Assembly (NCBI RefSeq): GCF_035084215.1
Contig: NC_090363.1
Span: 5,766,001-5,830,000, forward strand
DNA: 64,000 nt
Direction of reading: 5' to 3'
Origin: Heptranchias perlo
Lineage: Eukaryota
Shown here piece by piece: positions 23,571-57,309 of the stretch. How positions within the stretch are numbered: position 1 is the stretch's first letter; every line of letters starts with the position of its first letter. The notes beneath the pieces were generated by a model. The model was not told the origin of the DNA, did not search any database, and saw only the letters and a list, made by a program, of their open reading frames with translations. The translations under genes and the position numbers were made by a program.

Positions 23571-23720
23571 TTATTGGAATGTGGAAAGGACCTCGCAGAG
23601 AGGCTGGTTTGAAGGGATTGACTGTCTGCTGAACCTCGATGCGTTGACTGTGCTGTAGTCAGGAAAGGAGACATCACTGTTGAGTGGCAGAGTGCTATAT
23701 CTGGGATCAGAAGGTGTTGC
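23571..23720 (-). CDS. NCR3: Gene A last exon (ATPSDPRYSTLPLNSDVSFPDYSTVNASRFSRQSIPSNQPLCEVLSTFQ*)
   Basis: tcttag acceptor, phase 0, TAA; two YxxL/V motifs; summed CDS 780 nt stays in frame. Confidence 0.68.
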   Translation of the reverse strand, partial: ATPSDPRYSTLPLNSDVSFPDYSTVNASRFSRQSIPSNQPLCEVLSTFQ

Positions 23721-23934
23721 CTAAGAGTTACAATTAAAAATAAAATCACATTCTTTTTCACCGATTCTATTTGCATTTGTTCAGACTATAATTTTCTTTT
23801 ACTGTTTAGAGTGAGAAATATCAATCAGAGAGAATGAATTTGTTGAGGTGAAAAATCAAAAACGTTTCATTTTTTAAAAAAAATCAGCCCCGTGGTCCAA
23901 AAGATTTAAAAATGACATTGAGGACTTTAAATTA

Positions 23935-24220
23935 AGACTTGCATTTATATAGCGCCTTTCACGACCTCAGGAAGTCCCAAAGCGCTTTGCAGCCAATTAA
24001 GTACTTTCGAATTGTAGCCACTGTTGTCGTGTGTGAAATGCGGCAGCCAATTTGTGCGCAGCAAGCTCCCACAAACAGCAATGAGATAATGACCAGATAA
24101 TAGGGGTGAAATTGGGCAGGGATGCAGAACAGGCGGAATCGCATTTGCTCACTGCTACACGACACGCACTGCAGTGTAAGCTTAGATTATGTGCTCGACT
24201 CCAGAGTGGGCCTTGAACTC
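23935..24220 (-). mobile_element. SINE (same family, partial)
   Basis: Tail and core present. Confidence 0.75.
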
Positions 24221-24378
24221 AAAGGCGGCATTTTTAAGCTAAGGCGCCTGCCGGGATGCTGACGGGATCGGGTGCAAGAGTCTTATGACAGAGAGGCAAC
24301 AGTTTTACCAGATCTAATCTGCAAGACGATAGTAATTTTTTTAACTAACAATAAAACTAACAATAAAAATGATCTTAC

Positions 24379-24419
24379 TGACTCCTGATTCGGTAGTGAC
24401 ACCTGAAGTTCAATTATTT
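24379..24419 (-). CDS. NCR3: Gene A cytoplasmic exon (EIIELQVSLPNQES)
   Basis: ttccag/gtaaga; 41 nt, phase 1->0. Confidence 0.62.
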
Positions 24420-26626
24420 CTGGAATATGAACAGAAAGTGTTATATAGATATATGATGCAGACAATGTATCATCATTCTCAATCAGCAGTGGTTAGTTTT
24501 TTACTTTCTCCCCTCAAACCCCATTCCTTCCGGTTGCCAACTTTGGCTGGGCACAGCACCAGGGCTGCCAATCTCCAATAAGTTATCTAAATGGCCAATC
24601 TTCATACAGGAAGGTTAGAATTCTCCCGTCAGCATTCCCATCCTATTGTTCTTATTGGGAAATTCGAATCGCAAACCCAGCATTTTTCCAAATCAAGGAT
24701 GACACCTAGCATAGGAACGGAGGAACAGGAGTAGGCCGTTCAGCCTGTTCCACCATTCAGTGAGATTATGGCTGATCTGTATCTTAACTCCATCTGCCTG
24801 CCTTGGTTCAATATCCCTTAATACCCTTGTCTGACACAAATCTATCAATCTCAGTATTGAAAATTTCTTTTGACCCCCCCATCCTCAACAGCTTTTTGGG
24901 GGAAGAGTTCCAGATTCCCACTACCCTATGTGTGAAGAAATGCTTCCTGACATCACCCCTGTACGACCTAGCTCTAATTTTAAGGTTATGCCCCCTTGTT
25001 CTAGACGCATCCCTCCCTTACCACAGGATCAATGGAAGGCGGAGAATCAACAACACAACTGAGGGGATTGTTTTTCTCAGAGCAGTAAAAGAGAGAGGTC
25101 ACTGGATGAATTTATTTTGAACTGAGGACTAAGTGATGGAGTGACCAGCTGGAGTGAAGTGAGTGGGAGTGACCAGCAGTCCTGAGTTCCATGAAAGATG
25201 TAGATGGATATATGGTTGGAGGAGATTCATCACATGGGGCTGTCCAGGGGATTGAAAGCAAGGGTGGGACTCTTGAGGTCCACATTCTGTGGCAGGGAAG
25301 ACAATGGAATTCGTCAATGATAGTAACGATAAATGCAAAGAAAGCCTTGGATTCCTACAGAGCCCTTCACAATCTCAGGACATCCCAAAGAACTTTACAG
25401 CCAATGAAGTACTTCTGAAGTGTAGTCGGTGTTTCACTCTCGGGAAGTTTTGTTAGGCAAGGGTATGAGGGGACATGGAACCAAGGGGGGTAAATGGAGT
25501 TGAGATACAGATAAGCTATGATGTAATTGAATGACGGAACAGGCTCCAAGGGCTAAATGGCCTACGCCTTTTCCTATGTTCCTATGTAATGTATGGAACT
25601 ATGGTGTGACAGTGGATTCACAGTGTAGTTATATCAATGAATTGGAGTTTGTGAAGGGTCGCAGAAGCTAGCCAAGAGATGATTAGAGAAGTCTGTTCTG
25701 GAGGCAATGGAGGTCTAGATTAAGGGTTCAGTGCCAAAGAGAGAGAGATTGGGCGGGGAGGTGATAGGGATGCAAGCGGGCGATTGTCTGGAGGGGGTAA
25801 TATCGTCTTTGTGACTGACTGGATGGGGGCAAGTAGATCAACTCAGGATCGAACAGAACACTGAGTTTGTACACAATCTCGGCTGCTGGGAGGATTGTTG
25901 GGACTGAAACCAAAGTTATAGAGCTGTTAGAAATAGAAAGGGATGGTTTCAGTTTTGGCGGAATTTCGGCGTATCCATAATTTGATGTTGGTTGGATGGC
26001 CAACGGGCAGAGTGGAATCATAGGTGGAGGAGAGATACTGTTAAGCATCACCAACATACACTGTCGACTCAAGTATATCCTGCATTTCCTTAGGTTTCTC
26101 CATATGGGCTCTTTCAAAAAATAAGCAGCTAAAAAGGGTTAGGGTCAAACTTAAATCTGCTATGCACTTGTTTTAAACTGCCCGGTATGTTCTTTAATCA
26201 GTCAGACCTGGTGACCTGGGTGGTCAGTGGCTTAGACTCGTTGAGCTGATCTATCAGTGAAGCCACTGCACATTTTGACACCACGGAAATAAAAACAGAA
26301 CATGCTGAAAACGCTCAGCAGGTCAGGTCGCTCCACAGTGTTTGTTAAAGGCCACACCGCCATATTAGTGTTCTGTTGCCATAGTTTGGAAGGATGGAAG
26401 CTCCTCTCTAACGTTAGGTGATCACTACCTGTGCTGTGCTGATTATTCACTATTAATTGCACTTCGAGTTTCCCTCAATCACAGACAATTATTTATAGTG
26501 ATAGACACTTGAAAAGTTCACATGAAGTCCATCGTAGCACAAAGGGAAAAATTGTCAGAAAAACCACCGCGTTCGACTTTCAATAATGTGATTGTCAAAA
26601 TCTAAGAAATGCGCATAAATACTAAC

Positions 26627-26667
26627 CGTATAATTCACCTCTTCCCGATTGTGTAACCGTATGTGGC
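26627..26667 (-). CDS. NCR3: Gene A cytoplasmic exon (GPHTVTQSGRGELY)
   Basis: ttgtag acceptor, gttagt donor (alternative in-frame gtgaat donor would end the exon at 26639); phase 2->1. Confidence 0.6.
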
Positions 26668-26769
26668 CTACAAGGTAAGATCAAGTTAAATACAATTATA
26701 TATTGCATATTGCTAATTTGTAAATGTCAATTTATACATAAACTAATAATGCATTATTCTTTGACATAC

Positions 26770-26788
26770 CCTTTAAGTCTTGATATCA
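26770..26788 (-). CDS. NCR3: Gene A 19-nt cytoplasmic microexon (VISRLK)
   Basis: Strong polypyrimidine acceptor ttttcttttatttag and gtatgt donor; needed to keep the downstream frame open. Confidence 0.65.
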
Positions 26789-26993
26789 CTAAATAAAAGA
26801 AAAGATCATAAGATTAGAAAACTTTACAGGTACTTTTTAGTTTCTTTGCGTTTCACACGGTAAATAACAGCTATTAATATTTACACGAACACATATTTCC
26901 GTGATCATCGCCAAGTTTACGACAAATCTGTGATTATAGACTAGCATTAATACGTCTCATAATGAACACAAACACGATTCAGAAAAACGTTAC

Positions 26994-27125
26994 CTTTACT
27001 TTGATAGTACAGCCGACACAGCAGGAGAATAATTATAACGGAGAACAAGCTCAGCACTCCTGTCGTCAGTGGAAATGCTCCATCGTTGGTTGAAACGTCC
27101 CGTGGAGGACAATTAGGTACCTTCT
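26994..27125 (-). CDS. NCR3: Gene A stalk + TM exon (KKVPNCPPRDVSTNDGAFPLTTGVLSLFSVIIILLLCRLYYQSK)
   Basis: tcccag/gtaacg; 132 nt, phase 1-1; hydrophobic helix. Confidence 0.85.
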
Positions 27126-27201: not shown

Positions 27202-28976
27202 GAGAGAGTAGGGCCTCTTAAGGATCAACAAGGTCATCTATGTGCGGAACCACAAGAGATGGGTGAGATCCTAAATGAATATTTCACATCGGTATTTACG
27301 GTTGAGATAGGCATGGATGTTAGGGAACTTGGGGAAATAAATAGTGATGTCTTGAGGAGTGTACATATTACAGAGAGGGAGGTGCTGGAAGTCTTAACGC
27401 GCATCAAGGTAGATAAATCTCCGGGACCTGATGAAATGTATCCCAGGACGTTATGGGAGGTTAGGGAGGAAATTGTGGGTCCCCTAGCAGAGATATTTGA
27501 ATCATCGACAGCTACAGGTGAGGTGCCTGAAGATTGGAGGGTAGCAAATGTTGTGCCTTTGTTTAAGAAGGACGGCAGGGAAAAGCCTGGGAACTACAGA
27601 CCGGTGAGCCTGACATCTGTAGTGGGTAAGTTGTTAGAGGGTATTCTGAGAGACAGGATCTACGGGCATTTGGAGAGGCAGTGACTGATTAGGAACAGTC
27701 AGCATGGTTTTGTGAGAGCAAAATCATGTCTCACAAATTTGATTGAGTTTTTTGAAGGGGTAACCAAGAAGATAGATGAGGGCTGTGCAGTAGACGTGGT
27801 CTACATGGACTTCAGCAAAGCCTTTGACAAGGTACCGCATGGTAGGTTGTTACATGAGGTTAGATCTCATGGGATCCAAGGTGAGGTAGCCAATTGGATA
27901 CAAAATTGGATTGACGACAGAAGACAGAGGGTGGTTGTGGAGGGTTGTTTTTCAAATTGGAGGCCTGTGACCAGCGGTGTGCCTCAGGGATCGGTGCTGG
28001 GTCCGCTGTTATTTGTTATTTATATTAATGATTTGGATGAGAATTTAGGAGGCATGGTTAGTAAGTTTGCAGATGACACCAAGATTGGTGGCATTGTGGA
28101 CAGTGAAGAAGGTTATCTAGGATTGCAACGGGATCTTGATAAATTTGACCAGTGGGCCGATGAATGGCAAATGGAGTTTAATTTAGATAAATGTGAGGTG
28201 ATGCATTTTGGTAGATCGAATCGGGCCAGGACCTACTCCGTTAATGGTAGGGCGTTGGGGAGAGTTATAGAACAAAGGGATCTAGGAGTACAGGTTCATA
28301 GTTCCTTGAAAGTGGAATCACAGGTGGATAGGATGGTGAAGAAGGCATTCAGCATGCTTGGTTTCATTGGTCAGAATATTGAATACAGGAGTTGGGATGT
28401 CTTGTTGAAGTTGTACAAGACATTAGTTAGGCCACACTTGGAATACCGTGTACAGTTCTGGTCACCCTATTATAGAAAGGATATTATTAAACTGGAAAGA
28501 GTGCAGAAAAGATTGACTAGAATGCTACCGGGACTTGATGGTTTGACTTATAGGGAGAGGTTGGATAGACTGAGACTTTTTTCCCTGGAGAGTAGGAGTG
28601 ATCTTATAGAAGTCTATAAAATAATGAGGGGCATAGATAAGGTCGATAGTCAAAATCTTTTCCCAAAGGTAGGGGAGTCTATAACGAGGGGGCATAGATT
28701 TAAGGTGAGAGGGGAGAGATACAAAAGGGTCCAGAGGGGCAATTTTTTCACTCAAAGGGCGGTGAGTGTCTGGAACGAGCTGCCAGAGGCAGTAGTAGAG
28801 GCGGGTACAATTTTGTCTTTTAAAAAGCATTTGGACAGATACATGGGTAAGATGGGTATAGAGGGATATGGGCCAAGTGCAGGCAACTGGGACTAGCTTA
28901 GTGGTATAAACTGGGCGACATGGACATGTTGGGCCAAAGGGCCTGTTTCCATGTTGTAAACTTCTATGATTCTATG
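27202..28976 (+). mobile_element. CR1 LINE, 5'-truncated, RT nearly intact
   Basis: ORFs 27259-27684 and 27712-28896 (YMDFSKAFDKVPH, GVPQGSVLGP, KFADD); (TTCTATGA)n tail. Confidence 0.95.
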
Positions 28977-29831: not shown

Positions 29832-30170
29832 TTTCAGTTATTATAAGTTGTGTTCCTGTCCCGTTTCCATCCCCAAATGTCGGGATTTCCACCTCGCAGT
29901 AGTAAAAATCCGAGTCCATTTTCGTTAAATTGACGATTTTAATGAAAGCCAGTTGTTGGGCAAATAATTCCGGCCCCGACTTCGTCAGCCGGTTCTGATA
30001 GAAAGGATTCCGATCTAACACTTCCACGTTTTGTGAGGCCCGTCTCCAACCCACTCGTCCGACAGTGCCGTTCCCTTCAAAAGTGCAGTTCATCTGCACT
30101 GAATCTCCTTCTGTTAGAGTAATGTTGGCCGGTGACTGGAACACGCTGAGCTCACTCATCAACCCATTGT
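29832..30170 (-). CDS. NCR3: NKp30/NCR3-like gene A, VJ-type IgV exon
   Basis: ctctag/gtaagt; 339 nt, phase 1-1; Cys..W..RL..DSDFYYCEVEI..GNGTGTQL closely follows NKp30 (YVCRVEVLGLGVGTGNGTRL). Confidence 0.9.
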
Positions 30171-30940: not shown

Positions 30941-30959
30941 CAAAGATTCCCTTCTATGC

Positions 30960-32480
30960 AGTTAACATAAAAGGGAATCCAAAAGTCTTCTATAGACATA
31001 TATATAGTAGACGGGTGGTAAGAGGAGGGATGTGGCCGATTAGGGACCAAAAAGGAGATATACGCATTGAGGCAGAAGGCATGGCTGAGGTACTAAATGA
31101 GTACTTTGCATCTGTCTTTACCGAGGAAGAAGATACGGCCAAAGCCACAGTAAAAGAGGAGGTAGTTGAGATATTGTATGGGATAAAAATTGTTAAAGAG
31201 GAGGTACTAGAAAGGCTGGCTGTACTTAAAGTAGATAAATCACCAGATCCTGGTTGGGTGCATCCTAGGTTGCTGAGGGAAGTAAGGGTGGAAATTATGG
31301 AAGTGCTGGCCACAATTTTCCAATCCTCCTTAGTCACAGGGATGGTGCATGAGGACTGGAGAATTGCAAATGTTACACCCTTGTTCAAAAAAGGATGTAA
31401 AGATAAACCCAGCAACTACAGGCCAGTCAGTTTAACCTCGGTGGTGGGGAAGCTTTTAGAAACAATAATCCGGGACAAAATTAATAGTCACTTGGACAAG
31501 AGTGGATTAATAAGGGAAAGCCAGCATGGATTTGTTAAAGGTAAATCGTGTTTGACTAACTTGATTGAGTTTTTTGATGAGGTAACGGAAAGGGTTGATG
31601 AAGGCAATATGGTTGATGTTGTGTATATGGACTTTCAAAGGCGTTTGATAAAGTGCCACATAATAGGCTTGTCAATAAAATTGAAGCCCATGGAATAAAA
31701 GGGGCAGCGGCAACATGGATACGAAATTGGCTAAGTAGCAGAGAACAGAGGGTAGTGGTGAACAGTTGCTTTTCAGACTGGAGGAAAGTATGCAGTGGTG
31801 TTCCCCAGGGGTGGATACTGGAACCTCTGCTTTTCTTGGTATACAATTTTACAACACCAAGTTATAGTCCAACAATTTTATTTGGGCTATAAATTGGTGT
31901 TGTAAAATTGTTTACAATTGTCAACCCCAGTCAATCACCGGCATCTCCACATCATTTCTTGGTATATAATAATGACTTGGGTGTACAGGGCCACAATTTC
32001 AAAATTTTCAGATGTCACAAAACTTGGAAGTGTAGTGAACAGTGAGGAGGATTATGATAGACTTCAAGAGGATATAGACAGGCTGGTGGAGTGAGTGGAC
32101 AAGTGGCAAATGAAATTTAATGCTGAGAATTGTGAGGTGATACATTTTGGTAGGAAGAACGAGGAGAGGCAGTATAAACTAAAGGGGGACAACTCTAAAG
32201 GGGGTGCAGGATCAGAGAGACCCGGGGTACACAGGTCGCTGAAGGTGGCAGGGCAGGTTGAGAAAGTGGTTAAGAAAGCATACGAGATCCTAGGCTTTGT
32301 ACAACACTGGTTCGACCACAATTGGAGTATTGTGCGCGGTTCTGGGCACCACACTTTAGAAAGGATGTGAAGGCCTTAGAGAGGGTGCAGAAAAGATTTA
32401 CTAGAATGGTTTCAGGGATGAGGGACCTCAGTTATGCGAATAGACTGGAAAAGCTGGGATTGTTCTCCTTGGAGCAGAGA
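30960..32480 (+). mobile_element. CR1 LINE fragment, degenerate
   Basis: RT-region ORFs at 31015, 31653, 32095, 32322. Confidence 0.9.
31844..31954. mobile_element. 111-bp hairpin insertion (Penelope-type terminus) with 12-bp TSD
   Basis: 30-bp inverted repeat; flanked by TTTCTTGGTATA at 31832 and 31955. Confidence 0.75.
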
Positions 32481-32960: not shown

Positions 32961-33162
32961 CCACAGTCTGATCAAACTTTTCTGGTGAGCTGATGAATAG
33001 GAACTGTTTGCTAACGGAACAATTTGTGTCTAACTCAAAGGCATTGAATTGTCCAGTAGAAGGTATAACATGTAAGACAATTTCATGTATAACACAATCG
33101 TACACGTTCAAACCTGAATAAAGATAAAACTAAAATGAGAAAATATGAAGACAGTGACTCAC

Positions 33163-33220
33163 CAATATGTAAAAACATTGTCACTAAATTCAGGATCGTC
33201 CATATGTGAATAGTTTGCAT
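33163..33220 (-). CDS. NCR3: NKp30/NCR3-like gene A, leader exon (MQTIHIWTILNLVTMFLHI)
   Basis: ATG, hydrophobic peptide, phase-1 gtgagt donor; identical copy upstream of gene B. Confidence 0.8.
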
Positions 33221-33300
33221 TTTTACACGTTCTCTACAGGACAATACCAGCTCACGTTTGGCTTGCAGCGACCCAAAGTGCTGCTAAACACAGCAAACAT

Positions 33301-33365
33301 TCCACCGCAGGCACTGACGTGTGTGGAAAAAAAACCTGCGGTGGTTTAATTACCACAGACCACGA
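33301..33365. promoter_or_regulatory. RUNX-core cluster (ACCGCA, TGCGGT, ACCACA) plus TGACGT upstream of the gene A leader
   Basis: Three RUNX cores within 55 bp, ~85-140 bp upstream of the ATG. Confidence 0.45.
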
Positions 33366-33845
33366 ACTATGTTTATTATTTTTCCAATTGTGCTGGGAAA
33401 CAATATTTTAACAATAATTAGGAAAGAACACTACGTCAATGTTGCATAAGCGTCACCGAGTATATTGAGACAAAAATGGATTAGAGTTCAGTTTAATCCT
33501 CCATAAACTACAATGGTTTGCACCGGAGATAGAAACTCATCTTAAGTTTCCTCAAAAAGCAGAATGTATGGAAACAGTGCGCAGTGTAAAGCCAGATTGA
33601 AATGTGGAATTCCATGGATGAAACTATGCAGCGATAGACTCCATGGCGGGATTACCCAAATGGACACTTCGGATAGATACCCGGAGTCTCTGATATGCCT
33701 TTGGCACCAGATTCCGGGATGACCCATTTGCTTCAGAAGAAGAATGCGCGCGGAGAAAATCAGAAGGGAAACTTTATTGAAAAAACTTAGACAGAATTAT
33801 AAAAGCAGATTCTGTTAGCAGAGGGTGTTACATTCAAAAGGCCTG

Positions 33846-38866: not shown

Positions 38867-40064
38867 AACATTACCCCTACTTTGTGGATGGGCTCGTTAT
38901 GGAAACTTCGCAATTTTCATTTCGATTCACTTCAACAGAAATGAAAATGGTGCGATTTGTATAAAGGGCGGCCAATCCACAATGCCTTTTTCATGCCAGG
39001 ACAATGGGAGCAATTTTAACGTCTGTAGTCAATGGAAGGGAAAATTGGGTGAGATGTATAACGTGCGGTCGACCCAATAGCAGGACAGGTTCTTTTTCCA
39101 ATCTGCCTTGTTTTGGCTGTAAGCGGGGATGCTACAGTTTGCTCCGTACTCCTGGTTAAGCAACAGAAATGTCAGCTATGATTTCCGCTCGCAATCACAT
39201 TGAATGACCACTGGACACAAACATCCATATGTGAACATTGGGTGAGGGAATGTTGGACTCGGTTGTGATGTCCATTCTACCCATCAATGCCTGTGCCAGC
39301 TCATTGAAAGAGCTATCAAATTATTCCCACTCCCCCACTCTTCCTCCATAGTTGTGAAAACTGGTCCTTTACAAGTCTATATCCGATTCCCCTTCGAAAG
39401 TTTCTACTGACCCTATTCCCACCACCCTTTCAGTCAGTGTATTCCAGATCATAACAATTGGCTGTGTAAAAAAAATTCTCCTCGTCTCTCCTCTGGTTCT
39501 TCAGCCAATTATCTTCAACCTGTATCCTTTGGTTACCGACCCCTCCGCCAGTAGAAACAGTTTCTCTTCATGGGCTATATCAAAACCCCTCATCATTCTG
39601 AACACCTGTATTAAATCTCCCCTTAACCTCCTCTGCTCTAAGGAGAACAATCCCAGAGCGTTCTATTCACATAGGGACCTGAAAAAATCTTCACCCTATA
39701 AAGTATCTTCTGTAGACCAGTAGCTTAATTTAAACTGAAATGTCTAAGGGTCCTTGTGGTTTTGGTTTTAAAGTGCAAAAAACCATCAAGCATTTGTACA
39801 TGTTGCCTTTTCTCGCAGAAACCCGGATGTAACAGTACCGCTGAAAGCTGTAACCATCAAAAAATTAAAGCTTATATATGTTGGAGTATAGATTAAGGTC
39901 AATTATTCACGTGTATTGGAACAATATGTTTCGCAAGAAAACAAAAAAAATTATCGCTCCAGTTTTTAGTGTGAAAGTAACAGATCTACTAAAGGGGGTG
40001 TGGGTGTGGCTTGCTTGTAACAAACTTAAACCACAAAACATTACCTGATAAGAAACAACTATGC

Positions 40065-44643: not shown

Positions 44644-44730
44644 CTACTGCATGTTCTTTCTTGTCTGTGGTCCACGTTTTTGCTTTGTCTTAACTTCATT
44701 ACCGTGACAATGAAGATAATTCTCTTCATG
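44644..44730 (-). CDS. NCR3: Gene B putative last exon (HEENYLHCHGNEVKTKQKRGPQTRKNMQ*)
   Basis: ttctttctccaaag acceptor; open in phase 0 to TAG; reading frame depends on the preceding exon. Confidence 0.5.
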   Translation of the reverse strand, partial: HEENYLHCHGNEVKTKQKRGPQTRKNMQ

Positions 44731-45494: not shown

Positions 45495-47860
45495 GCATTC
45501 AGGAGAACTTTTTTTAGCTAGTACGTAGCAAGCCCAACAAGAGAGTGTGCAGTTCTGGACATAGTTTTAGGGAATAAAGGGGCAGGTGGAAGGAGTATCA
45601 GTGGGAGAGCATTTTGGTGATAGTAATCATAATTCAGTTAGATTTAGCGTAGTTATGGAAAAGGACAAATGTAGAACAGGGGTAAAAGTTCTCAATTGGG
45701 GAAAAGCCACATTTACTAACCTGAGATGTGATTTGGCAAAAGTGGACTGGAAACAGCTACTTGAAGGTAAATCAGTGTCAGACCAGAGGGAGGCGTTTAA
45801 GGAGGAAATAGAGTGGGCTCAGAGCAAGCATGTTCCCACAAAGAAAAGGTGTGGGACTCCCAAATCTAGAGTCCCCTGGATGTCAAGGAGCATACAGGGT
45901 ATGATAAGACAAAAAAGGGAAGCTTATGTCGGATACCGAGAGCTCAACACTGCAGAAAGCCTAGAGGAGTATAGAAAGTGCAGGGGTAAAATTAAATAGG
46001 AATTTAGGAAAACAAATAGAGGACATGAAAAAAACATTGACAAGTAAAATCAAGGAAAACCCAAAGATGTTTTATAAATACATAAAGAACATGAGGATAA
46101 ATAAGGAAAGAGTAGGGCCTATTAGAGACCAAAAAGGAAACCTATGTTGGGAGGTGGAAGACCCGGGTATGGTTTTCAATGACTATTTTGCGTCTGTCAT
46201 CAAAAAAGAGGGGGACGATGCAAGCATTGTAGTTAAGGAGGAGGAGTGTGAAATATTGGATGGGATAAACATAATGGGAGAGGAAATATTAAGGGGATTA
46301 GCATCTTTGAAAATAGATAAATCACCAGACCCGGATTAAACGTATCCCAAGCTGTTAAGGGAAGCAAATGGGAGGAAATAGCAGAGGTTATGACCATCAT
46401 TTTCCAATCCTCTCTGGCTATAGGCGTGGTGTCTGAGGACTGGGGGACTGCTAACATTGTACCATTGTTTAGAAAGGGAGAAAGGTTTAGACCGAGTAAT
46501 TACAAGCCAGTCAGCCTAACCTCGGTGGTGTGCAAATTATTGGAAACAATTCTGAGGGACAGTATTGATCGTCATTTAGAAAGGCACGGATTTGTTAAGG
46601 GAAGGTCACGTCTGACTAACTTGATTGAATTTTTTGAGGAGGTAACAAGGAGGTTCGATGAGGGTAGCATGTTTGATGTAGTCTACATGGATTATAGCAA
46701 GACATTTGACAAGGTCCCACGTGGCAGACTGCTCAGGAAAGTAAAAGCCCATGAGATCCAAGAGAAAGTGGTAAATTGGATTCAAAATTAGCTCAGTAGC
46801 AAGAAGCAAGAGGTAATGGTTGACAGGTGTTTTTGCGACTGGAAGGCTGTTTCCAGTAGGGTTCCACAGGGCTCAGTATTAGTTCCCTTGCTTTTTGTGG
46901 TATACATGAATGATTTAGACCTAAATGTAGGGGGCATGATTAAGAAGTTTGCAGATGATACAAAAATTGGCCCGTTGATAGTGAGGAGGAAAGCTGTAGA
47001 CTGCAGGAAGATATCAATGGACTGGTCAGGTGGGCAGAAAAGTGGCAAATGGAATTTAATCTGGAGAAGTGTGAGGTAATGCATTTGGGGAGGGCAAACA
47101 AGGCAAGGGCGTACACAATAAATGGGAGGATACTGAGAGATGTAGAGGAACAGAAGGACTCTAGAGTGCATGTCCACAGATCCCTAAAGGTAGCAGGATG
47201 GTTAGATAAGCCGATTAAGAAGGCATACAGGATACTTCCCTTTATTAGCCGAGGCATAGAATATAAGAGCAGGGAGGTTATGCTCAAACTGTATAAAACA
47301 CTAGTTATGCCACAGCTAGATTATGTGTAGTGTTCTGGTCACCACATTACAGGAAAGTTGTGATTGCACTAGAGAGGGTACAGAGGAGATTTACGAGGAT
47401 GCTGCCAAGTCTGGAGAATTTTAGCTATGAGGAAAGATTGGATAGCCTGGGGTTGTTTTCTTTAGAACAGAGGAGAGATTTAATTGAGTTGAACAAAATT
47501 ATGAGGGGCGTAGATAGAGTGAATAGGAAGGACCTATTTCCCTTAGCAGAGAGGTCAATAAACAGGGGGCGTATATTTAAAGCAATTGGTAGAAGGATTA
47601 GAGGGGAGTGGATGAGAATTTTTTTTCACCCAGAGGGTGGTGGGGGTCTGGATCTCACTGCGTGAAAGGGTGGTAGAGGCAGAAACCCTCATCACATTTA
47701 AAAAGTACTTGAATATGCACGTGAAGTGCTGTAACCTACAAGGATACGGACCAAGAGCTGGAAAGTGGAGTTAGGCTGGATAGCTCATTTTCAGCCGGCT
47801 TAGACACGATGGGCGAATGGTCTCTTTCTGTGCTGTAAATTTCTATGATTCTATGGTTCT
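45495..47860 (+). mobile_element. CR1 LINE, degenerate
   Basis: Frameshifted EN-end/RT ORFs 45586-47665; TTCTATGA tail. Confidence 0.93.
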
Positions 47861-49754: not shown

Positions 49755-49798
49755 CTGATGATTGGCATGGCTCTGTACTTTGTTTCTGTGTGGCAATT
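49755..49798 (-). CDS. NCR3: Gene B cytoplasmic exon (RIATQKQSTEPCQSS)
   Basis: aaacag/gtaaat; 44 nt, phase 2->1. Confidence 0.62.
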
Positions 49799-50488: not shown

Positions 50489-51349
50489 AAGGGGTACCGT
50501 TCCATATTTTCCTTTATCTTATTGTCTCTGCTATGTAATTCCTATGAATGGCTTTTAAGGGGATATTTGTAACCGAACTCGCCGGCGGCAAACTTACTGG
50601 ATCGGGTGGAATTCTCGATTTACACCCCGCCCAATCCTATCAGTTTCCCAACAGGCCGATTAGCTTAAAATTGCCCATTTTCAGTTGATGACATTAAGTC
50701 CCGCTTCAATTACTGGGACAATTTTCTTTTTGAAAATTATTTTGAGAACTATATTCATATTATAAAGATGCAGAACTCATTCCACGTAACTATAGTCTAG
50801 TTAACATTCACATAGCATTCAATCGCACTGAGAGAAACGGGAGAGGAATTATTAAGTCAATCAAGCGACTCATTAAACACTCAAGTATTAATTATTTGCT
50901 TCATATTCCATGCTTGTCGCTGGCTATAATGAAGGCTTCTGTCTTTGCTGATACTAATGGAATATAAACCAAGCGCCAATCGTTATCATATCGTATGTTC
51001 CATTTAGACGAGAGCCTTTTATCCCTGCCTAGCGGAAATAGTAAAATGGAAGCAAAACAATGGCTGACACACACACACAAATAAACAGACACACAAACAC
51101 ACACACACACACAAACACATACACGCGCGCGCTCTGTTCAACTTGTTACAAGCAGTTCACAGTCTGTTAAGTAAACCAAACAAATGTGCGAACCACTTAA
51201 CCGGTTCTTTTGCAGAATCGAAAGAAGTACATTCTCTGTAGAAGAAGAAGATATTTAGCAGATGTGTTATTGAACTGCAATTTTTCGTACTTTGAAAAAC
51301 TTTTAGAAGAAAGCATTACATTCGGCAAGGAAACTATTGTTTGGCTTAC

Positions 51350-51368
51350 CTGAAAAGCGAAGCTAAAG
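51350..51368 (-). CDS. NCR3: Gene B 19-nt microexon (ALASLF)
   Basis: ttacag/gtaagc; same size and phase (1->2) as the gene A microexon. Confidence 0.65.
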
Positions 51369-51487: not shown

Positions 51488-53232
51488 TAGAAACATAGAA
51501 ACATAGAAAATAGGAGCAGGAATAGGCCATTCGGCCCTTCGAGCCTGCTCCGCCATTCAATATGATCATGGCTGATCCTCTATCTCAATACCATATTCCC
51601 GCTCTTTCCCCATACCCCTTGATGCCTTGTGTGTCCAGAAATCTATCTAGCTCCTTCTTAAATATATTCAGTGAATTGGCCTCAACAGTCTTCTGTGGTA
51701 GAGAATTCCATAGGTTCACCACCCTCTGAGTGAAGAAATTTCTCCTCATCTACCCTGTATCCTGAGACTGTGACCCCTCGTTCTGGACCCCCCAGCCAGG
51801 GGAAATATCTTCCCTGCATCCAGTCTGTCTCGCCCTGTCAGAATTTTATATGTTTCAATGAGGTCCCCTCTCATTCTTCAAAACTCGAGAGAATACAGGG
51901 CCGAGTCGACCCAATCTCTCCTCATATGACAGTCCTGCCATCCCAGGAATCAGTCTGGTGAACCTTCACTGAACTCCCTCTATGGCAAGTATATTCTTTC
52001 TTAGGTAAGAAGAACAAAACTGCATACAATCCTCCAGGTGTGGTCTCACCAAGGCCCTGTATAACTGCAGTAAGACATCCTTGCTCCTGTACTCAAATCC
52101 TCTTGCAATGAAGGCCAACATGCCATTTGCCTTCCTAACTGCTTGCTGCACCTGCAAGTTTGCTTTCAGTGACTGGTGTACAAGGACACCCAGGTCCCTT
52201 TGTACATCAACATGTTCCAATCTATTACCATTTAAATAATATTCTGCCTTTCTGTTTTTCCTTCTGAAGTGGATAACTTCACATTTATCCACATTGTACT
52301 GCATCTGCCATGTATTTGACCACTCACTCAACTTGTCTAAATTGCCTTGAAGCCGCTTTGCATCCTCCTCACAACTCAGGATCCCATCTAGTTTTGTGTC
52401 GTCAGCAAGCTTGGAAATATTACATTTGGTTCCCTCATCCAAATCATTGAGATATATTGTGAATAGCTGGGGCCCAAGCACTGATCCCTGTGGTACCCCA
52501 TTAGTCACTGCCTGCCATCCCGAAAAAGACCCATTTATACCTACTCTCTGTTTTTTTTTCCTGTCTGTTAACCAATTTTCAATCCATGCCAGTATATTAC
52601 CACCAATCCCATGTGCTTTAATTTTGCACACTAATCTCTTATGTGGGACTTTAACAAAGGCCTTCTGAAAATCCAAATAAACCACATCCACTGGTTCTCC
52701 CTAATCTATTCTACCAGTTACATCCTCAAAAAACTCCAGGAGGTTTGTCAAACATGATTTCCCTTTCATAAATCCATGTTGACTTTGTCTAATTCCGTCG
52801 ATATTTTCTAAGTGTCCTGTTATCACATCCTTTATAATAGACTCTAGCATTTTCCCTACTACTGATGTCAGGCTAACCGGTCTGTAGTTCCCGGTTTTCT
52901 CAGTCCCTCCTTTTTTAAATAGTGGGGTTACATTTGCCACCCTCCAATCTGCAGGAACTGTTCCAGAGTCTATAGAATTTTGGAAGATGACAACTAATGC
53001 ATCCATTATTTCCATGGCCACCTCTTTTAGTGCTCTGGGATGCAGATTATCAGGCCCTGGGGGTTTATCGGCTTTCAGTCCCATTAATTTCTCCAGCACT
53101 ATTATTTTACTAATACTAATTTCCTTTAATTCCTTCTTCTCACTCCCCCATTGGTTCCCTAGCATTTCTGGGAAGTTACTCGTGTCCCCTTCGGTGAACA
53201 CGGAAGCAAAGTATTTGTTTAATTGCTCTGTA
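51488..53232 (-). mobile_element. CR1 LINE, 5'-truncated
   Basis: RT ORFs 52701-53201 and 51966-52691. Confidence 0.95.
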
Positions 53233-53651
53233 CATTCATCTCTGCTGGATGTCTTTACTGTTAGACCTGATGACTTAATAGTAGGATTTTAATAATAATG
53301 AGCAGTGCCCCTAATATTTATTTCGTTTCCTGGTTAATGTCTCTTTAATTGTTTTATTTTTTCCCATATTTGGCAGATGATAACGAAGTACATGATGAAA
53401 ACAAAGTTACTTGTTATCCCACATTCCCTGAGAAATACCGTGTGCCTCAGCACGTTATCACTAGTTTGAAAAAGTCATCCTGATCACAAGGTTCCTAATT
53501 CATTGCAAAATGGGAAATCTTTTGAAAATTCACCACAAAATTGCAAAAAGAAAACTGAATCGTATTATGACGATTTCTTGTTATTCTGAGGCATTAGATA
53601 GAAAATGTGATGATTCTACAGCTTGTCTATTATTTTAAACATTTGAAGTAC

Positions 53652-53786
53652 CTTTATTTCTCCTAACAAGGACTGCAATCACCACAAGCAGTGTCAGGGT
53701 AATTAGTATTGTCACTCCACCTCTCACTACGACCCACATCAAATCAAACTGTGAGCTTTCTAAACTGTTTGGGTTGTCACAAGAAT
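53652..53786 (-). CDS. NCR3: Gene B stalk + TM exon (HSCDNPNSLESSQFDLMWVVVRGGVTILITLTLLVVIAVLVRRNK)
   Basis: ctacag/gtactt; 135 nt; TM with N-terminal Arg (VVVRGG, cf. NKp30 LLLRAG). Confidence 0.87.
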
Positions 53787-54133
53787 CTGTAGAAAGAAAA
53801 AAAAACAATAATAAGTAATTTGTCCGTAAATAGAAATAGTAAGTACAACAGCAATGAAAACAGTGATACAAGGAAACACAGATAGAATAGATAGGGAGAC
53901 GGGTACACAAGCAGAAACGCAAATAAATACAAGATAGATAGGGAGAGAAAGCGAAGGAGACACACACCACCCATCGGCAGAAAGAGTGAGCAAGACAAAA
54001 AGGCAGAAACAGAGGGAAATCCGCCCAACACCGGTGTGACACACCATTAAAGAAAGGATTAAGGAAACAAGAGAGTTTTAAATATGGAAACGATATCCCA
54101 ATGCCTTAATGTTACAATGTTAGGTTTTCTTAC

Positions 54134-54460
54134 GCTTTACAGTAACCGAGGTTCCTCTACCGACTGCCTTCGGCTCGCCCATTATTTCAACCTCACAGTA
54201 ATACACTCCAGACTCGCATTGCGTCATATTCATAATTTTGATTGATGCATCCCGCCTGAGTTTGAACGCATCCTTGTCGGCTTTTATTAGTCTTTTCTTG
54301 TACCTCGGAGAATCAAAGTCTAAGATACTGCTATCTTTTCTCCATCTGAAGATACCAGGCCCTGATATACGAAAGGTGCAATTCAAAATCACGCTTTCAC
54401 CTTCGAATAAAGTAACTGAAGTGGGATTTTGCACTATGGTAGATGTTTCAGCTTCCAAAC
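54134..54460 (-). CDS. NCR3: NKp30/NCR3-like gene B, VJ-type IgV exon
   Basis: cactag/gtaaga; 327 nt, phase 1-1; NCTF..WRK..RL..ESGVYYCEVEI..VGRGTSVTV. Confidence 0.9.
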
Positions 54461-56044
54461 CTAGTGACGCACAAAAAAGCACAAGGATTAATTAGCCATC
54501 GTTACAGGATAAAGCAATACGCATTATGCACCTTGTACCGATACCATCTTGGTTTTGTAGCAGCACCATCGTCTGTGACTCAAATGGTTGTAGGTTCAAG
54601 GCGCAATTGAGGCCTTGAGCACATTATTCTAGGCTGACACTTCAATGCAGTACTAAGTGAATGTGTTTTTTTCAAAGCGGAGAAAGTTCTCCCGGTGCAA
54701 TAGCCAACTTTCAGTCCTCAAGAAACACCACCAAAACAGCTTAACTGGCCATTCGTCTCATTGCTCTTTGTTGGACTTTGTTGTGAGCAATGTGGTTGAC
54801 GCGTTTACCTACAAAGCAACAAAGACTAGTCAAAAAACAATAATCATTGTTCAATAGTCATTCATTGGCTTTGGGACGCCTTGAGGTTGTGTAAGATGCA
54901 ATACAATTGCAAATTTTTTCTTTGTATCATGCAGCCTCAACTTACACTTTTGCTTTAATATGTTATGTTATTAATTCCAAAGGAAATTATTATATGAATA
55001 ATAGTAAGAAAGAAAAAGAGAGAAAAAAAACAAGAAAGTAACAAAAAAGAAAGAAAATGTTACATTCATTATTGCTTCATTAATAATAGTATGAAGTAAT
55101 AAATCAATGCCATACATTTTTTATTCTTATATAATTATCCAGGAATGTCTGATTTCCACATGAGGGAAATATAAGAAAACACGTTCAGCAAATGTAATAG
55201 AGGCGGGGTATTAGCTTGTTGTATATATTCGACATTAAGCCGTAAGTTGTACAGTAAATCATTTGTGCATTGTAAACTGTGTACATCTTAAAGTCAGGAA
55301 AAATAAAACATTGGCTCATGTTAATTCAGTCATCTAATTGACGGTAAATATCGAGTCTAATACACCAGGCGACTGTCAGAAAATTAATTAGTTAAGGACA
55401 GCATGGTCAATGTGATGAATTTGTGAACCGCTGTTTAGATATTGAAGCCATACGCTAGTCACCCTTGTGAACATAAGGTCCCACTTTTCGTTACAGATTG
55501 AACCAAGGTTTTTTTGTATATTGAGCTCAATTCCATCAATGATCAACTTTTTACACCTTGCCAATAAATAAATCAATTTCATTTACTTCCTACATTTAAA
55601 GATTACCATCTCGGACCCTGGTGTATGATTATCTCATTTGGCTGCTAACCGTAAAGCAAAAATAAGCTATGAATAGAATAATAGGATATGACCTATCAAA
55701 AATATAGTTATTGTGATGCTTTCACAGATAAAAAACCTTCATTGTTTATTTATTATCAACGTGTGTCCATGAGTTCCCTGGGGTGATTTATTCATTTAAT
55801 GGCCAATATTGCTGGGGTATAAAATATACCCAGGTCAGAAAACCACTAGGTAAGATTTCCAAATATATGCAGAATCATTAAACAAAAAATGATGAAAAAT
55901 ATTATTCAAATAACAAGCAAGAAATATTACAGAGAACAACAAAGAACGATAGTTTTTTCTAAATGTGGTGCATTTGGCTGCAAATGTTTTGGAAGAAATC
56001 AATTCGGTGATTGTATTAGTTGATTTTATAAACATTATTTTGAT

Positions 56045-56580
56045 ATATATATATTAATGACCTGGACTTAGGTATACAGGGTATAATTTCAAAGTTTGCA
56101 GATGACACGAAACTCGGAAATGTAGTAAATAATTTAGAGGATAGTAACAGACTTCAGGAGGACACAGACAGACTGGTGAAATGGACAGACACATGGCAGA
56201 TGAAATTTAACATGGAGAAGTGTGAAGTGATACATTTTGGTAGAAAGGATGAGGAGAGGCAATATAAACTAAATGGTACAATTTTAAAGGTGGAGCATGA
56301 ACAGAAAGACCTTGGGTGCATGTAATCAAATCTTTGAAAGTGGCAGGACAAGTTAGCGAGTTCCACATTCCAACCATTCTCTGGGTAAAGAAGTTTCTCC
56401 TGAATTCCCTATTGGATTTATTAGTGATTGTCTTATATTTATGGCCCCCTACTTCTGGTCTCCCCCGCAAGTGGAAACATCTTCTCTACGTCTACCCTAT
56501 CAAACCCCTTTAATATCTTAAAGACCTCTATTAAGTCATCCCTCAGACTTCTCTTTTCTAGAGAAAAGAGCCCCAACCTG
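56045..56580. mobile_element. Fused CR1 fragments (+ strand 56045-56355, - strand 56356-56580)
   Basis: KFADD region followed by an inverted 3' end. Confidence 0.8.
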
Positions 56581-57251
56581 ATCAATCTTTTCTGGTGAAC
56601 TGATGAAGAGGAACTGTTTGCTAACGGAAATATTTGTGTCTAACTCAAAGGCATTGAATTGTCCAGTTGAAGGTATAACATGTTAGACAATTTCATGTAT
56701 AACACAATCGATTAGGAGCCCTGAACTTAATTTATTTCCAGAAGTAAATTTTAGTAGGTCCCTTTAATTATATTAATCTCTTAAAGCCAATTCACGGCAT
56801 CTGCTTGAAGGAGAACATTTAATGTGTGTGCATATTTCTAATCAGCATTTCATTGCCTGAAACGGCGGTTGAAGCAGATTCAATAGCGTCTTTGAACTGG
56901 GAATTGGATATATACTTGCAATGGAAAAAATGCAGGGCTATGGGGAAAGAATGGGGGAGGGGGTTAAATTGGCAGTTCTTTCAAAGAGCCGGCACAGGCA
57001 CGATGGGTCGGATGGCCTCCTCCCGTTCTGTATAATTCTGTGATAAAGCTGGCCTAAAGATTAAATACTTGTACCCTACAAGTGCTGGATTCACCACAAC
57101 AAAGTAAAATTAAACAGTTTTTTTTACACTGTCACTACAATTATGTATTATTCCTGTGTAAGGAACCAGTCTGCCCAACCAAATGCTCGTACACGTTCAA
57201 ACCTGAATAAAGATAAAACTAAAATGAGAAAATATGAAGACAGTGACTCAC

Positions 57252-57309
57252 CAATATGTAAAAACATTGTCACTAAATTCAGGATCGTCCATATGTGAAT
57301 AGTTTGCAT
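57252..57309 (-). CDS. NCR3: NKp30/NCR3-like gene B, leader exon (MQTIHIWTILNLVTMFLHI)
   Basis: Identical to the gene A leader; phase-1 gtgagt donor. Confidence 0.8.

What the first reader, a model, noticed from the sequence alone, without database searches (positions are those of the whole stretch)
23571..57309. Tandem pair of NKp30-like receptors with different signalling designs (candidate paired-receptor system)
Seen: two complete - strand genes, each leader / single VJ-type V / stalk-TM / small cytoplasmic exons. Gene B has an Arg at the start of the TM (WVVVRGG) and no clear tail motif. Gene A has an uncharged TM and a ~90-aa tail with three tyrosine motifs. Established: mammalian NKp30 (single NCR3 gene) signals via a TM Arg pairing with CD3zeta/FcRgamma and has a short tail. 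Inference: B is adaptor-dependent and A signals through its own tail, giving a paired system not seen in mammals.
Basis: partly seen in the sequence, partly recalled or inferred. Interest (0 to 1): 0.85.

Follow-up and report, generated by a model that had tools for sequence, protein, structure and literature searches.

The report
Two shark NKp30-family receptor genes
The window holds two neighbouring shark genes of the already described NKp30 (NCR3) immune-receptor family: one is expressed and has a long tyrosine-bearing tail, and the other is a recent patchwork copy that has gained a membrane arginine, so they are not a matched activating/inhibitory pair.

Summary
Gene A is real and complete. 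Its seven exons translate to a 259-aa NCBI protein of Heptranchias perlo: six match by tblastn and the 19-nt exon c1 was read by eye. A spliced contig in a public run joins the TM and tail exons.

Gene B has an intact V exon and a stalk/TM exon with the Arg. Its leader is a 98% copy of gene A's leader region. Its body is a recent duplicate of another H. perlo gene, P0171 (V 87%). The tail exons lie as far down as 44644.

Both V domains are NKp30-like: NKp30 gives the top four Foldseek PDB hits for each. Their nearest named relatives include nurse-shark NCR3 records.

A and B share only 41% V identity and belong to separate old lineages. Tail-bearing, uncharged-TM NCR3 genes from sharks are already in public records. 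Gene A has no canonical ITIM, ITSM or ITAM. Gene B's Arg is unique in its lineage (0 of 13) but sits at the family's usual depth.

This scan's unchecked notes list further NKp30-like clusters on neighbouring DNA of this genome.

The parts
33163..33220 (-). Gene A leader exon (58 nt, MQTIHIWTILNLVTMFLHI plus 1 nt, donor GTGAGT)
   Evidence: Found by the leader scan. Residues 1-19 of P0157 match.
29832..30170 (-). Gene A V exon. It is VJ-type: the J-like GTGTQLIIT lies in the same exon. Phase 1 in, phase 1 out.
   Evidence: PDB best hit is NKp30 3noi_A at E 4e-07. AF2 pLDDT 92.2. Foldseek top 4 are NKp30.
26994..27125 (-). Gene A stalk (CPP) and uncharged TM exon, 132 nt
   Evidence: The spliced contig piece covers 26994-27125.
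26770..26788 (-). Gene A cytoplasmic exon c1 (19 nt, ISRLK)
   Evidence: Joints 26666>26769 (cut +1) and 26788>26994. Flanks. Matches P0157 by eye; too short for tblastn.
26627..26667 (-). Gene A cytoplasmic exon c2 (41 nt, PHTVTQSGRGELY)
   Evidence: joints; 13 of 13 residues.
24379..24419 (-). Gene A cytoplasmic exon c3 (41 nt, IIELQVSLPNQES). The Y-E-I-I motif spans the c2/c3 junction.
   Evidence: joint 24419>26627; 14 of 14 residues. flanks.
23571..23720 (-). Gene A last coding exon (49 codons plus stop) with RYSTL-x10-YSTV. The 3' UTR continues below 23400.
   Evidence: 49 of 49 residues. The contig piece 23400-23719 runs on 134 nt beyond 23400.
57252..57309 (-). Gene B candidate leader exon. 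Its peptide is identical to gene A's leader.
   Evidence: No lineage-typical leader (MAMDRC...) was found anywhere in the window.
57187..57736 (-). Duplicated 5' block of gene B, 98.2% identical over 551 bp to 33098-33646 of gene A. Flanking homology is about 90%. It ends inside intron 1 at B 56342 / A 32736.
   Evidence: blastn; window-by-window identity.
54134..54460 (-). Gene B V exon (VJ-type, GRGTSVTV in the same exon)
   Evidence: 87.3% identity to P0171. AF2 pLDDT 91.2. Foldseek top 4 are NKp30.
53652..53786 (-). Gene B stalk (SCD) and TM exon, with the Arg codon AGA at 53722-53724
   Evidence: 88.6% identity to P0171. The Arg is followed by 19 uncharged residues and then RRNK.
51350..51368 (-). 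Gene B cytoplasmic exon c1 (19 nt, A-LASLF). The lineage motif here is AYALLV.
   Evidence: Exon scan. Lineage motif counted.
51201..51235 (-). Gene B cytoplasmic exon c2 (ECTSFDSAKEP). At the expected phase-1 end the next two bases are TT. A GT lies one base upstream, which shifts the frame.
   Evidence: Sequence. 12 of 12 residues to P0171. The junction position is inferred from the Pristis isoforms P0041/P0153.
49755..49798 (-). Gene B cytoplasmic exon c3 (LPHRNKVQSHANHQ)
   Evidence: All exon residues are identical to P0171.
44644..44730 (-). Gene B last coding exon (HEENYLHCHGNEVKTKQKRGPQTRKNMQ plus stop)
   Evidence: One difference from P0171 within the exon.
58956..59091 (-). Relic third copy of the A-type leader region. 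It reads MHTIQS and then a stop.
   Evidence: 76.9% identity to 33098-33243. Translation.

Best explanation
The window, most likely from the sevengill shark Heptranchias perlo, carries two tandem minus-strand members of the elasmobranch NCR3 (NKp30) multigene family. They lie downstream of a DDAH gene.

GENE A
- It is the orthologue of a known nurse-shark NCR3 subtype (P0161, 250 aa).
- It is transcribed and spliced into a 259-aa type I receptor: leader, one non-rearranging VJ-type V domain, a Cys-containing stalk, an uncharged TM and a 90-aa tail.
- Inferred mechanism: after ligand binding the tail tyrosines are phosphorylated and recruit SH2 proteins.
- The one tyrosine kept in all six species of the lineage is YS(T/N)(V/I). 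In Heterodontus this same site is a canonical ITIM (LEYSTI), and nurse and zebra sharks carry a C-terminal ITIM that gene A has lost (Cys in place of Tyr). I therefore lean to an inhibitory or modulating role (about 55%) over an ITAM-like activating role (about 25%).

GENE B
- It is a young patchwork. A copy of gene A's promoter/leader block (98% identical) sits in front of a duplicate of the P0171-type gene. That type is a separate lineage conserved in sharks and rays, with an invariant juxtamembrane AYALLVRECSSFDSAKE.
- On B's branch all the stalk/TM changes occurred (5 against 0), including Ala to Arg. The AYALLV motif became ALASLF, and one tail splice donor is out of phase.
- If expressed, B would present an NKp30-like V domain on a TM whose Arg sits at the depth used by TM-Arg relatives. 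It could then pair with an Asp-bearing ITAM adaptor as mammalian NKp30 does.
- My odds for B: working adaptor-dependent receptor about 40%, decaying copy about 40%, ordinary lineage-type function (assembly error or alternative splicing) about 20%.

A and B are neighbours from different subfamilies, not a matched pair.
For: GENE A STRUCTURE AND EXPRESSION
- The exons equal the stored protein P0157.
- A spliced contig with GT-AG introns removed was found in run X1.

FAMILY
- PDB phmmer with A's V exon gives NKp30 as best hit, E 4e-07.
- A profile of 18 family sequences has NKp30 as the top 4 PDB hits, best E 1.3e-16.
- Foldseek top 4 are NKp30 for both models: A at E 2.0e-10 and TMq 0.82, B at E 7.3e-11 and TMq 0.82.
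- Relatives are named NCR3 or NCR3-like in Heterodontus, Chiloscyllium, Pristis, Rhincodon, Ginglymostoma, Polypterus, Acipenser, Protopterus and Gopherus.

LINEAGES
- V-A is 68.75% identical to the Heterodontus NCR3-like protein P0006. V-B is 63% identical to P0003 and 87% to P0171.
- In the tree of 56 V rows, A lies in a 9-row elasmobranch clade inside a starred 18-row clade that holds turtle NCR3. B pairs with P0171 (100/99*) inside a starred 15-row clade of 8 shark and 7 ray rows.

GENE B AS A PATCHWORK
- The duplicated 5' block is shown. No lineage-type leader is in the window.

GENE B'S SIGNALLING END
- 0 of 13 lineage genes are charged at B's Arg position (A in 9, T in 3, V in 1). 12 of 13 have AYALLV and 1 has AYAALV.
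- The Arg is followed by 19 uncharged residues, as in 8 TM-Arg relatives.
- Polarised changes between B and P0171: V exon 5 on B's branch, 4 on P0171's, 4 ambiguous; stalk/TM exon 5 against 0.

TAIL MOTIFS.

MAMMALIAN NKp30: TM Arg paired with CD3zeta/FcRgamma, from passages of PMC6514059.
Against: - The sequence margin for NKp30 is small. In the profile search mouse SIRPalpha scores 60.3 bits against 64.0. With B's V exon alone, SIRPalpha (E 2.2e-06) and TCR alpha chains rank above NKp30 (E 2.9e-05).
- The tree held no mammalian NKp30, CD28, SIRP or TCR rows, because none was available as a stored protein. It therefore does not test monophyly with mammalian NCR3.
- The run is labelled only 'RNA?' by the tool. 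That it is RNA rests on the intron-free contig.
- The c2 donor problem in B rests on one base of the assembly and on a comparison with protein isoforms of other species.
- The direction of gene A's signalling is inferred from motif homology only.
- Kinlein et al. 2021 could not be read, so which published subtypes match A and B is unknown.
Confidence: 0.8

Rival explanations
1. A and B form a functional paired system: B is adaptor-dependent through its TM Arg, A signals through its own three-tyrosine tail, and the design is new relative to mammals.
For: Both designs are present side by side. B's Arg sits 19 residues above the cytosolic RRNK, as in 8 TM-Arg relatives. A's tail is in a transcript.
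Against: The V domains are only 41% identical and lie in separate lineages that each contain sharks and rays, so a shared ligand is not implied. Public shark NCR3 records already combine uncharged TMs with ITIM tails. B's Arg is private to this copy. B's tail model is doubtful. Only one of A's three motifs is conserved.
Confidence: 0.15
2. Gene B is a decaying by-product of segmental duplication, on its way to being a pseudogene. The Arg, the lost AYALLV motif and the out-of-phase donor are neutral damage, and only gene A functions.
For: - 3 of 6 residues are changed in a motif otherwise kept in 12 of 13 lineage genes.
- The c2 donor reads TT at the expected site.
- The leader is borrowed, and a further dead leader copy lies upstream.
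- None of the 16 proteins returned with P0041 as query carried B's V exon, while two other H. perlo proteins were returned. This is a weak sign that B has no annotated protein.
Against: - All exons keep open frames.
- Every splice site inspected for B's exons except the c2 donor is canonical.
- B's V exon has not changed faster than P0171's: 5 against 4 polarised changes.
- The changes cluster in the stalk/TM/c1 module (5 stalk/TM, plus 3 in c1, by eye; none on P0171's branch) rather than being spread over the gene.
- The Arg falls at exactly the family's usual depth.
- The promoter/leader block is 98-100% intact.
Confidence: 0.35
3. Gene A is an activating receptor that carries its own ITAM-like motif (YSTL-x10-YSTV) and recruits a Syk-family kinase directly.
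For: The motif is present in the last exon and in the transcript. From recall, a functional ITAM with a 12-residue spacer exists in human FcgammaRIIA.
Against: The spacer is 10, not 6-8, and the last residue is V, so it fails the canonical pattern. The first tyrosine is absent in the other 5 species of the lineage, which have QETVLP, QETILP or QGTVLQ there. The second tyrosine aligns with an ITIM in Heterodontus.
Confidence: 0.2

Closest known systems
Nurse-shark NCR3 family genes. Kinlein et al. 2021, Immunogenetics 73:333; seen only as a title in reference lists. Accessions MT914154-914161 are cited in PMC12227049. Proteins P0161, P0044 (QTT61901.1) and P0080 (QTT61898.1).
   Same: - A single non-rearranging VJ V domain, a multigene family, uncharged TMs with tyrosine-bearing tails, and the MQT... 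leader.
- Gene A's V exon aligns best with P0161's lineage: 55-57% identity, and the same clade.
- From recall of the abstract: eight divergent subtypes, linked to the MHC.
   Different: - A different species.
- Gene A has lost the C-terminal LTYAQV ITIM (it has Cys at the Tyr position) and gained RYSTL and an 8-residue insert in exon c3.
- I could not check whether the P0171/B lineage is one of the published subtypes, because the paper and its supplements were not available.
Human NKp30 (NCR3)
   Same: One VJ-type V domain. NKp30 is the best PDB match by sequence for A and by fold for both genes. They share the C-x-V-E-[VI] F-strand motif and the GxGT J-like end. Gene B has a TM Arg as NKp30 does (for NKp30).
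   Different: - The V domains are 25-29% identical to NKp30.
- Gene A has no TM charge and a 90-aa tail.
- B's lineage has a conserved tail of about 65 aa.
- Both shark genes have a stalk Cys.
- From recall, NCR3 is a single gene in humans, whereas here it is a large cluster.
Classical paired receptors (SIRPalpha/beta, KIR, PILR); general knowledge, recalled
   Same: B compared with P0171 looks like such a pair: 87% identical V domains, one with a TM Arg and a damaged tail, the other uncharged with an intact conserved tail.
   Different: A compared with B does not fit (41% V identity). P0171's tail has no ITIM, only KAYALL, so it is not an evident inhibitory partner.
CD28/CTLA-4 family
   Same: A single V domain, a membrane-proximal Cys in the stalk and tyrosine motifs in the tail. 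From a passage of PMC6514059, NKp30 is structurally similar to CTLA-4 and PD-1 and is considered a CD28-family member.
   Different: No YxxM or PD-1-type ITIM/ITSM pair in A or B. No CD28-family chain appeared among the top 50 fold matches for A or B. The only PD-1 entry, 5b8c_B at rank 36 for A, is a chain of the pembrolizumab Fv complex.

Membership tests
NCR3 / NKp30 family | One non-rearranging VJ-type V domain encoded in a single exon, ending in a J-like GxGTx(L/V)x(V/I) motif | tested here: met
   A ends in GTGTQLIIT and B in GRGTSVTV, each inside its V exon, with phase-1 borders. Pfam V-set: E 4e-09 for A and 1.8e-11 for B.
NCR3 / NKp30 family | The V domain is closer to NKp30 than to other V-set receptors | tested here: met
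   - Gene A: NKp30 is the best PDB sequence hit.
- Family profile: NKp30 is the top 4 hits, but only 4 bits above SIRPalpha.
- Fold search: NKp30 is the top 4 hits for both A and B.
- With B's sequence alone NKp30 is not the best hit.
- No tree with mammalian sequences could be built.
NCR3 / NKp30 family | Linkage to the MHC (class III region) | tested here: inconclusive
   A DDAH exon lies at about 11340-11492 on the + strand (DDAH1 in PDB, E 2e-11). That human DDAH2 is an MHC class III gene is recalled. An MHC class III block 125 kb beyond the window is only an unchecked scan note.
NCR3 / NKp30 family | Mammalian signalling design: TM Arg and a short tail without motifs | tested here: not met
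   Gene A has no TM charge and a 90-aa tail. Gene B has the Arg, but its lineage has a tail of about 65 aa. This feature describes the mammalian gene, not the wider family: public fish NCR3-like records show both designs.
NCR3 / NKp30 family | Binds a B7H6-type ligand | not testable with these tools
   No binding data. No B7H6-like gene was looked for in the window.
Paired activating/inhibitory receptors | The partners have near-identical ectodomains | tested here: not met
   A against B: 41% V identity and different lineages. B against P0171: 87%, so the feature is met for that pair only.
Paired activating/inhibitory receptors | One partner carries an ITIM and the other a TM charge with a short tail | tested here: inconclusive
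   B has the TM Arg and its tail is uncertain. Neither A nor P0171 has a canonical ITIM. A's orthologues have one in 3 of 6 species.

The most novel reading that the evidence does not exclude
Gene B may be an activating receptor caught at birth. A duplicate of the conserved P0171-type receptor took over gene A's promoter and leader. It changed an invariantly uncharged TM position to Arg at the depth (19 residues above the cytosolic basic anchor) seen in 8 TM-Arg relatives. It lost the invariant juxtamembrane YALL motif and is shedding its tail through a splice-donor change. B and P0171, not B and A, would then be the true pair. The locus would show step by step how activating partners arise in an ancient vertebrate receptor family.
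Probability: 0.3. Interest if true: 0.55.

Novelty: new member of a known kind. Interest (0 to 1): 0.33.

Why it matters
- NKp30 is, from recall of Kinlein et al. 2021, the one NK receptor traceable from sharks to humans. How its signalling designs diversified therefore bears on the origin of activating/inhibitory receptor logic.
- This window adds a confirmed, expressed sevengill-shark orthologue of a known tail-bearing subtype.
- It also shows that the tyrosine motifs of that subtype turn over between species. Only one is constant.
- It provides a concrete candidate for a newly formed TM-Arg copy built by exon-block shuffling.
- The family, its multigene nature and its mixed designs are already on record, so the finding extends known work rather than opening a new question.

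Tried and rejected
SEARCHES THAT FOUND NOTHING USEFUL
- The word-indexed search with A's V exon alone found nothing: 11 candidates, none at E<=0.001. The length window of 62-196 aa excludes full-length relatives.
- Pfam found only Ig families for the V exons and nothing for the TM or tail exons. It found nothing on three ORFs that contain DDAH exons.
- An Atlas search with residues 130-235 of P0171 gave no hit at 0.9 or above (best 0.85, unnamed). The conserved tail of B's lineage stays unexplained.
- No lineage-type leader for B was found in the window. The best tblastn E was 0.064, in an unrelated place.
- No further family exons were found elsewhere in the window.

PAPERS
- Kinlein 2021, Flajnik 2012 and Ohta & Flajnik 2015 are not held. 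What I say of them is from titles in reference lists or from recall. Their supplements, which I could not see, may list subtypes that match A and B.
- Searches for adaptors in sharks and for papers citing Kinlein gave nothing usable.
- I have not shown that B-type findings are absent from print.

REJECTED READINGS
- A canonical ITAM in gene A.
- A and B as recent duplicates of each other. Only the 5' block is shared.

ERRORS IN MY OWN CALLS
- In one search my coordinates for B's c2 and c3 were out of frame, and the 'last' row included one intronic codon. I use only the V and TM rows of that call.
- In one search P0164 was not parsed (tail 0). In one search the isoforms P0164, P0166 and P0167 matched neither pattern and are left out of the 13.
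I resent the same report with the field in place.

TREE
- I gave it 56 rows. These were V domains (at most three per protein) from the 46 proteins in my list of source names that kept a near-complete V domain, plus B's V exon.
- All representatives without a name, and domains beyond the third in multi-domain proteins, were dropped.

Full report
WHAT IS IN THE SEQUENCE

The window has exactly two V-type exons with the Cys...Trp...Tyr-x-Cys pattern. Both are on the minus strand, at 29832-30170 (gene A) and 54134-54460 (gene B). Each has phase-1 borders and ends in a J-like GxGT motif inside the same exon, so both are non-rearranging VJ-type V exons. The two V domains are 41% identical and share NCTF, WR and YYCEVEI.

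GENE A

- One public run (X1; the tool labels it 'RNA?', a guess) holds a contig of 1133 nt at depth 20.2.
  - The contig lies without any difference on 23400-23719 and 26994-27125.
  - It carries the joints 24419>26627, 26666>26769 and 26788>26994. All have CT..AC ends, which is GT..AG on the minus strand.
  - The joint between the last exon and the next one was among rows not shown. The 102 nt of the record between the two listed pieces equal 1+41+41+19, which fits.
  - An intron-free contig at that depth in a run of 115 million letters is best read as mRNA.
- Reading the exon flanks gives:
  - stalk/TM 26994-27125
  - c1 26770-26788
  - c2 26627-26667
  - c3 24379-24419
  - a last exon from 23720 with the stop at 23571-23573.
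- A leader ORF of 58 nt with a GTGAGT donor lies at 33163-33220.
Instead, a search with the stored Heterodontus protein P0006 returned P0157, 'uncharacterized protein [Heptranchias perlo]', 259 aa.
- tblastn of P0157 on the window matches the leader, V, TM, c2, c3 and last exons. The only mismatches are at split junction codons. c1 is too short for tblastn and agrees by eye.
The window is therefore most likely H. perlo, and gene A is already an annotated protein.

GENE B

- The V exon and the stalk/TM exon (53652-53786) are intact. The TM reads LMWVVVRGGVTILITLTLLVVIAVLVRRNK, with the Arg codon at 53722-53724.
- The leader at 57252-57309 encodes the same 19 residues as gene A's leader.
- It lies in a 551-bp block that is 98.2% identical to gene A's 33098-33646.
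  - The flanks are about 90% identical.
  - B has a 476-bp insertion in intron 1.
  - Homology ends inside intron 1 at A 32736 / B 56342.
- From the V exon onward, blastn found no A/B match over the V, TM or tail exons. The only matches there are at non-collinear offsets, which I take for dispersed repeats.
- A search with the stored Pristis protein P0041 returned P0171, a second H. perlo protein of 235 aa on a contig of the same length as P0157's. Against gene B's exons it shows:

| Exon | Identity of P0171 to gene B |
|---|---|
| V | 87.3% |
| stalk/TM | 88.6% |
| RECTSFDSAKEP exon | 12 of 12 |
| LPHRNKVQSHANHQ exon | all residues |
| last exon | all but one residue |

- P0171's own leader (MAMDRC...) is not in the window.
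- B is thus a recent duplicate of the P0171-type gene fused to an A-type 5' block.
- Its tail exons lie at 51350-51368, 51201-51235, 49755-49798 and 44644-44730. B therefore spans about 12.7 kb.
- Two things are wrong with the tail.
  - The 19-nt exon encodes ALASLF where 12 of 13 lineage genes have AYALLV and one has AYAALV.
  - The next exon should end in phase 1, as the Pristis isoforms TVAAP/IAAP show. The two bases after that point are TT. The only nearby GT is one base upstream and shifts the frame.
It skips the 19-nt exon and reads the next exon outside the conserved frame.
- I have no RNA for B, because the single read-laying run went to gene A.

FAMILY

- With A's V exon alone, human NKp30 is the best PDB hit (E 4e-07).
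- With B's alone, NKp30 (E 2.9e-05) ranks behind SIRPalpha and some TCR alpha chains.
- A profile of 18 family sequences puts four NKp30 entries on top (best E 1.3e-16, 64.0 bits). Mouse SIRPalpha follows at 60.3 bits.
- AlphaFold models of both V exons are confident (pLDDT 92.2 and 91.2). For both, the four best Foldseek PDB matches are NKp30:
  - A: E 2.0e-10, next is a shark IgNAR V at 4.0e-09.
  - B: E 7.3e-11, next is SIRPalpha at 1.2e-09.
- The exhaustive representative search found 1032 proteins at E<=0.001, of which 183 were at <=1e-10.
- Names were looked up for 30 representatives. Many are 'natural cytotoxicity triggering receptor 3(-like)', including nurse-shark entries QTT61901.1 and QTT61898.1. 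A third nurse-shark NCR3 (P0161) appeared.
- PMC12227049 cites MT914154-914161 as nurse-shark NCR3 genes (passage). These belong to Kinlein et al. 2021, which I could not read. That it reports eight divergent, MHC-linked subtypes is my recollection of its abstract.

LINEAGES

- In a maximum-likelihood tree of 56 V rows (named proteins only, at most three domains each; no mammalian or outgroup rows were available):
  - Gene A sits in a 9-row elasmobranch clade (90/96) with nurse-shark P0161, zebra shark, Heterodontus, Scyliorhinus, Mustelus, Chiloscyllium and a Pristis entry.
  - That clade lies inside a starred 18-row clade that also holds turtle NCR3.
  - Gene B pairs with P0171 (100/99*) inside a starred 15-row clade of 8 shark and 7 ray rows.
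- A and B are thus neighbours from two subfamilies that each contain both shark and ray members. They are not a duplicated pair.

SIGNALLING ENDS

- Gene A's 90-aa tail has ELYEII, PRYSTL and PDYSTV.
  - None fits the ITIM, ITSM or 6-8-spaced ITAM patterns.
  - YSTL-x10-YSTV fits only a loosened ITAM pattern.
- Across the six species of the lineage:
  - YS(T/N)(V/I) is always present, and in Heterodontus it is the ITIM LEYSTI.
  - A C-terminal ITIM, LTYAQV, exists in nurse and zebra shark, where gene A has LCEVLS.
  - RYSTL is unique to H. perlo.
  - The junction tyrosine is shared with Scyliorhinus and Heterodontus only.
- I therefore read gene A as a tyrosine-phosphorylation-dependent receptor of a lineage with inhibitory ancestry. 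The ITAM-like reading is a weaker rival.
- For gene B:
  - The Arg is followed by 19 uncharged residues before RRNK. That is the same count as in 8 TM-Arg relatives from bichir, sturgeon, gar, frog and turtles.
  - None of 13 genes of B's own lineage has a charge there.
  - Polarising the B/P0171 differences with six outgroups gives 5 B-derived, 4 P0171-derived and 4 ambiguous changes in V, but 5 against 0 in the stalk/TM exon. All three c1 changes are also on B's side.
- The change is concentrated in the signalling module. This fits either a shift toward an adaptor-dependent design or local decay, and I cannot separate the two without RNA.
- That mammalian NKp30 pairs through its TM Arg with CD3zeta/FcRgamma is from passages of PMC6514059.

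CONTEXT

- A DDAH exon lies upstream on the + strand.
- Unchecked notes of this scan place more NKp30-like clusters, and an MHC class III-like block, from the window's end to at least 680 kb beyond it.
- Public records from other sharks and basal fishes show both designs in this family:
  - ITIM tails: Heterodontus P0071, Chiloscyllium P0076, sturgeon P0092 and lungfish P0113.
  - TM Arg or Lys with short tails: Chiloscyllium P0012, Heterodontus P0139, bichir P0057 and sturgeon P0109.

VERDICT

The 'paired system not seen in mammals' is an already documented property of shark NCR3 genes, and A and B are not partners in the usual sense. What is new is modest:
- an exact, expressed model for the H. 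perlo orthologue of a known subtype
- the turnover of its tyrosine motifs between species
- a chimeric, Arg-bearing young copy (B) whose true counterpart would be P0171.

Noticed in passing
window 8577-16000, + strand (exon at about 11340-11492): Exons of a DDAH gene (dimethylarginine dimethylaminohydrolase) lie upstream of the receptor genes. The best PDB match is DDAH1 at E 2e-11. From recall, human DDAH2 lies in the MHC class III region, so this may reflect old synteny with NCR3.
   Followed up: partly
window 27259-28896 (+), 31015-31892 (+), 40011-41531 (+), 45586-47665 (+), 51588-53288 (-): Long reverse-transcriptase ORFs, which I take for LINE-type retroelement copies, lie in the introns of both genes and between them. 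One of them (51588-53288) separates B's TM exon from its first tail exon.
   Followed up: no
window 23916-24173, 24690-25076, 25335-25463: Short repeats inside gene A's largest tail intron are covered by contigs at word depths of tens of thousands in all four runs, with many joints between them. They look like highly expressed or very abundant SINE-like elements.
   Followed up: no
window 24379-24419: Gene A's exon c3 is 8 codons longer (VSLPNQES) than in the five other species of its lineage. An in-frame GT lies right after CAG, at the position where the shorter form would end, so the exon may have grown by a shift of the donor. The X1 contig uses the long form.
   Followed up: partly
window 58956-59091: A third, degraded copy of the A-type leader region (76.9% identity; MHTIQS followed by a stop) lies upstream of B's leader. 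This suggests repeated duplication of this block.
   Followed up: partly
Proteins P0171, P0168, P0170, P0172, P0041 and others (B lineage): The cytoplasmic stretch RRNK-AYALLVRECSSFDSAKE is nearly invariant from sharks to rays and matches no known family. Its YALL lies six residues from the membrane and could be a sorting signal. The function is unknown.
   Followed up: partly
Proteins P0003 (Pristiophorus), P0159 (Mustelus), P0008 (Scyliorhinus): These public gene models fuse two neighbouring family genes: an ITIM-type with a B-type, a TM-Lys type with an A-type, and two further V types. Tandem mixed arrays like the one here therefore exist in other sharks and confuse automatic annotation.
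   Followed up: no
Stalks of gene A (27090-27110 region, NCPP) and gene B (53775-53784, SCD): Both stalks carry a membrane-proximal cysteine that is conserved in most members of each lineage. This hints at disulfide-linked dimers as in the CD28 family.
   Followed up: no
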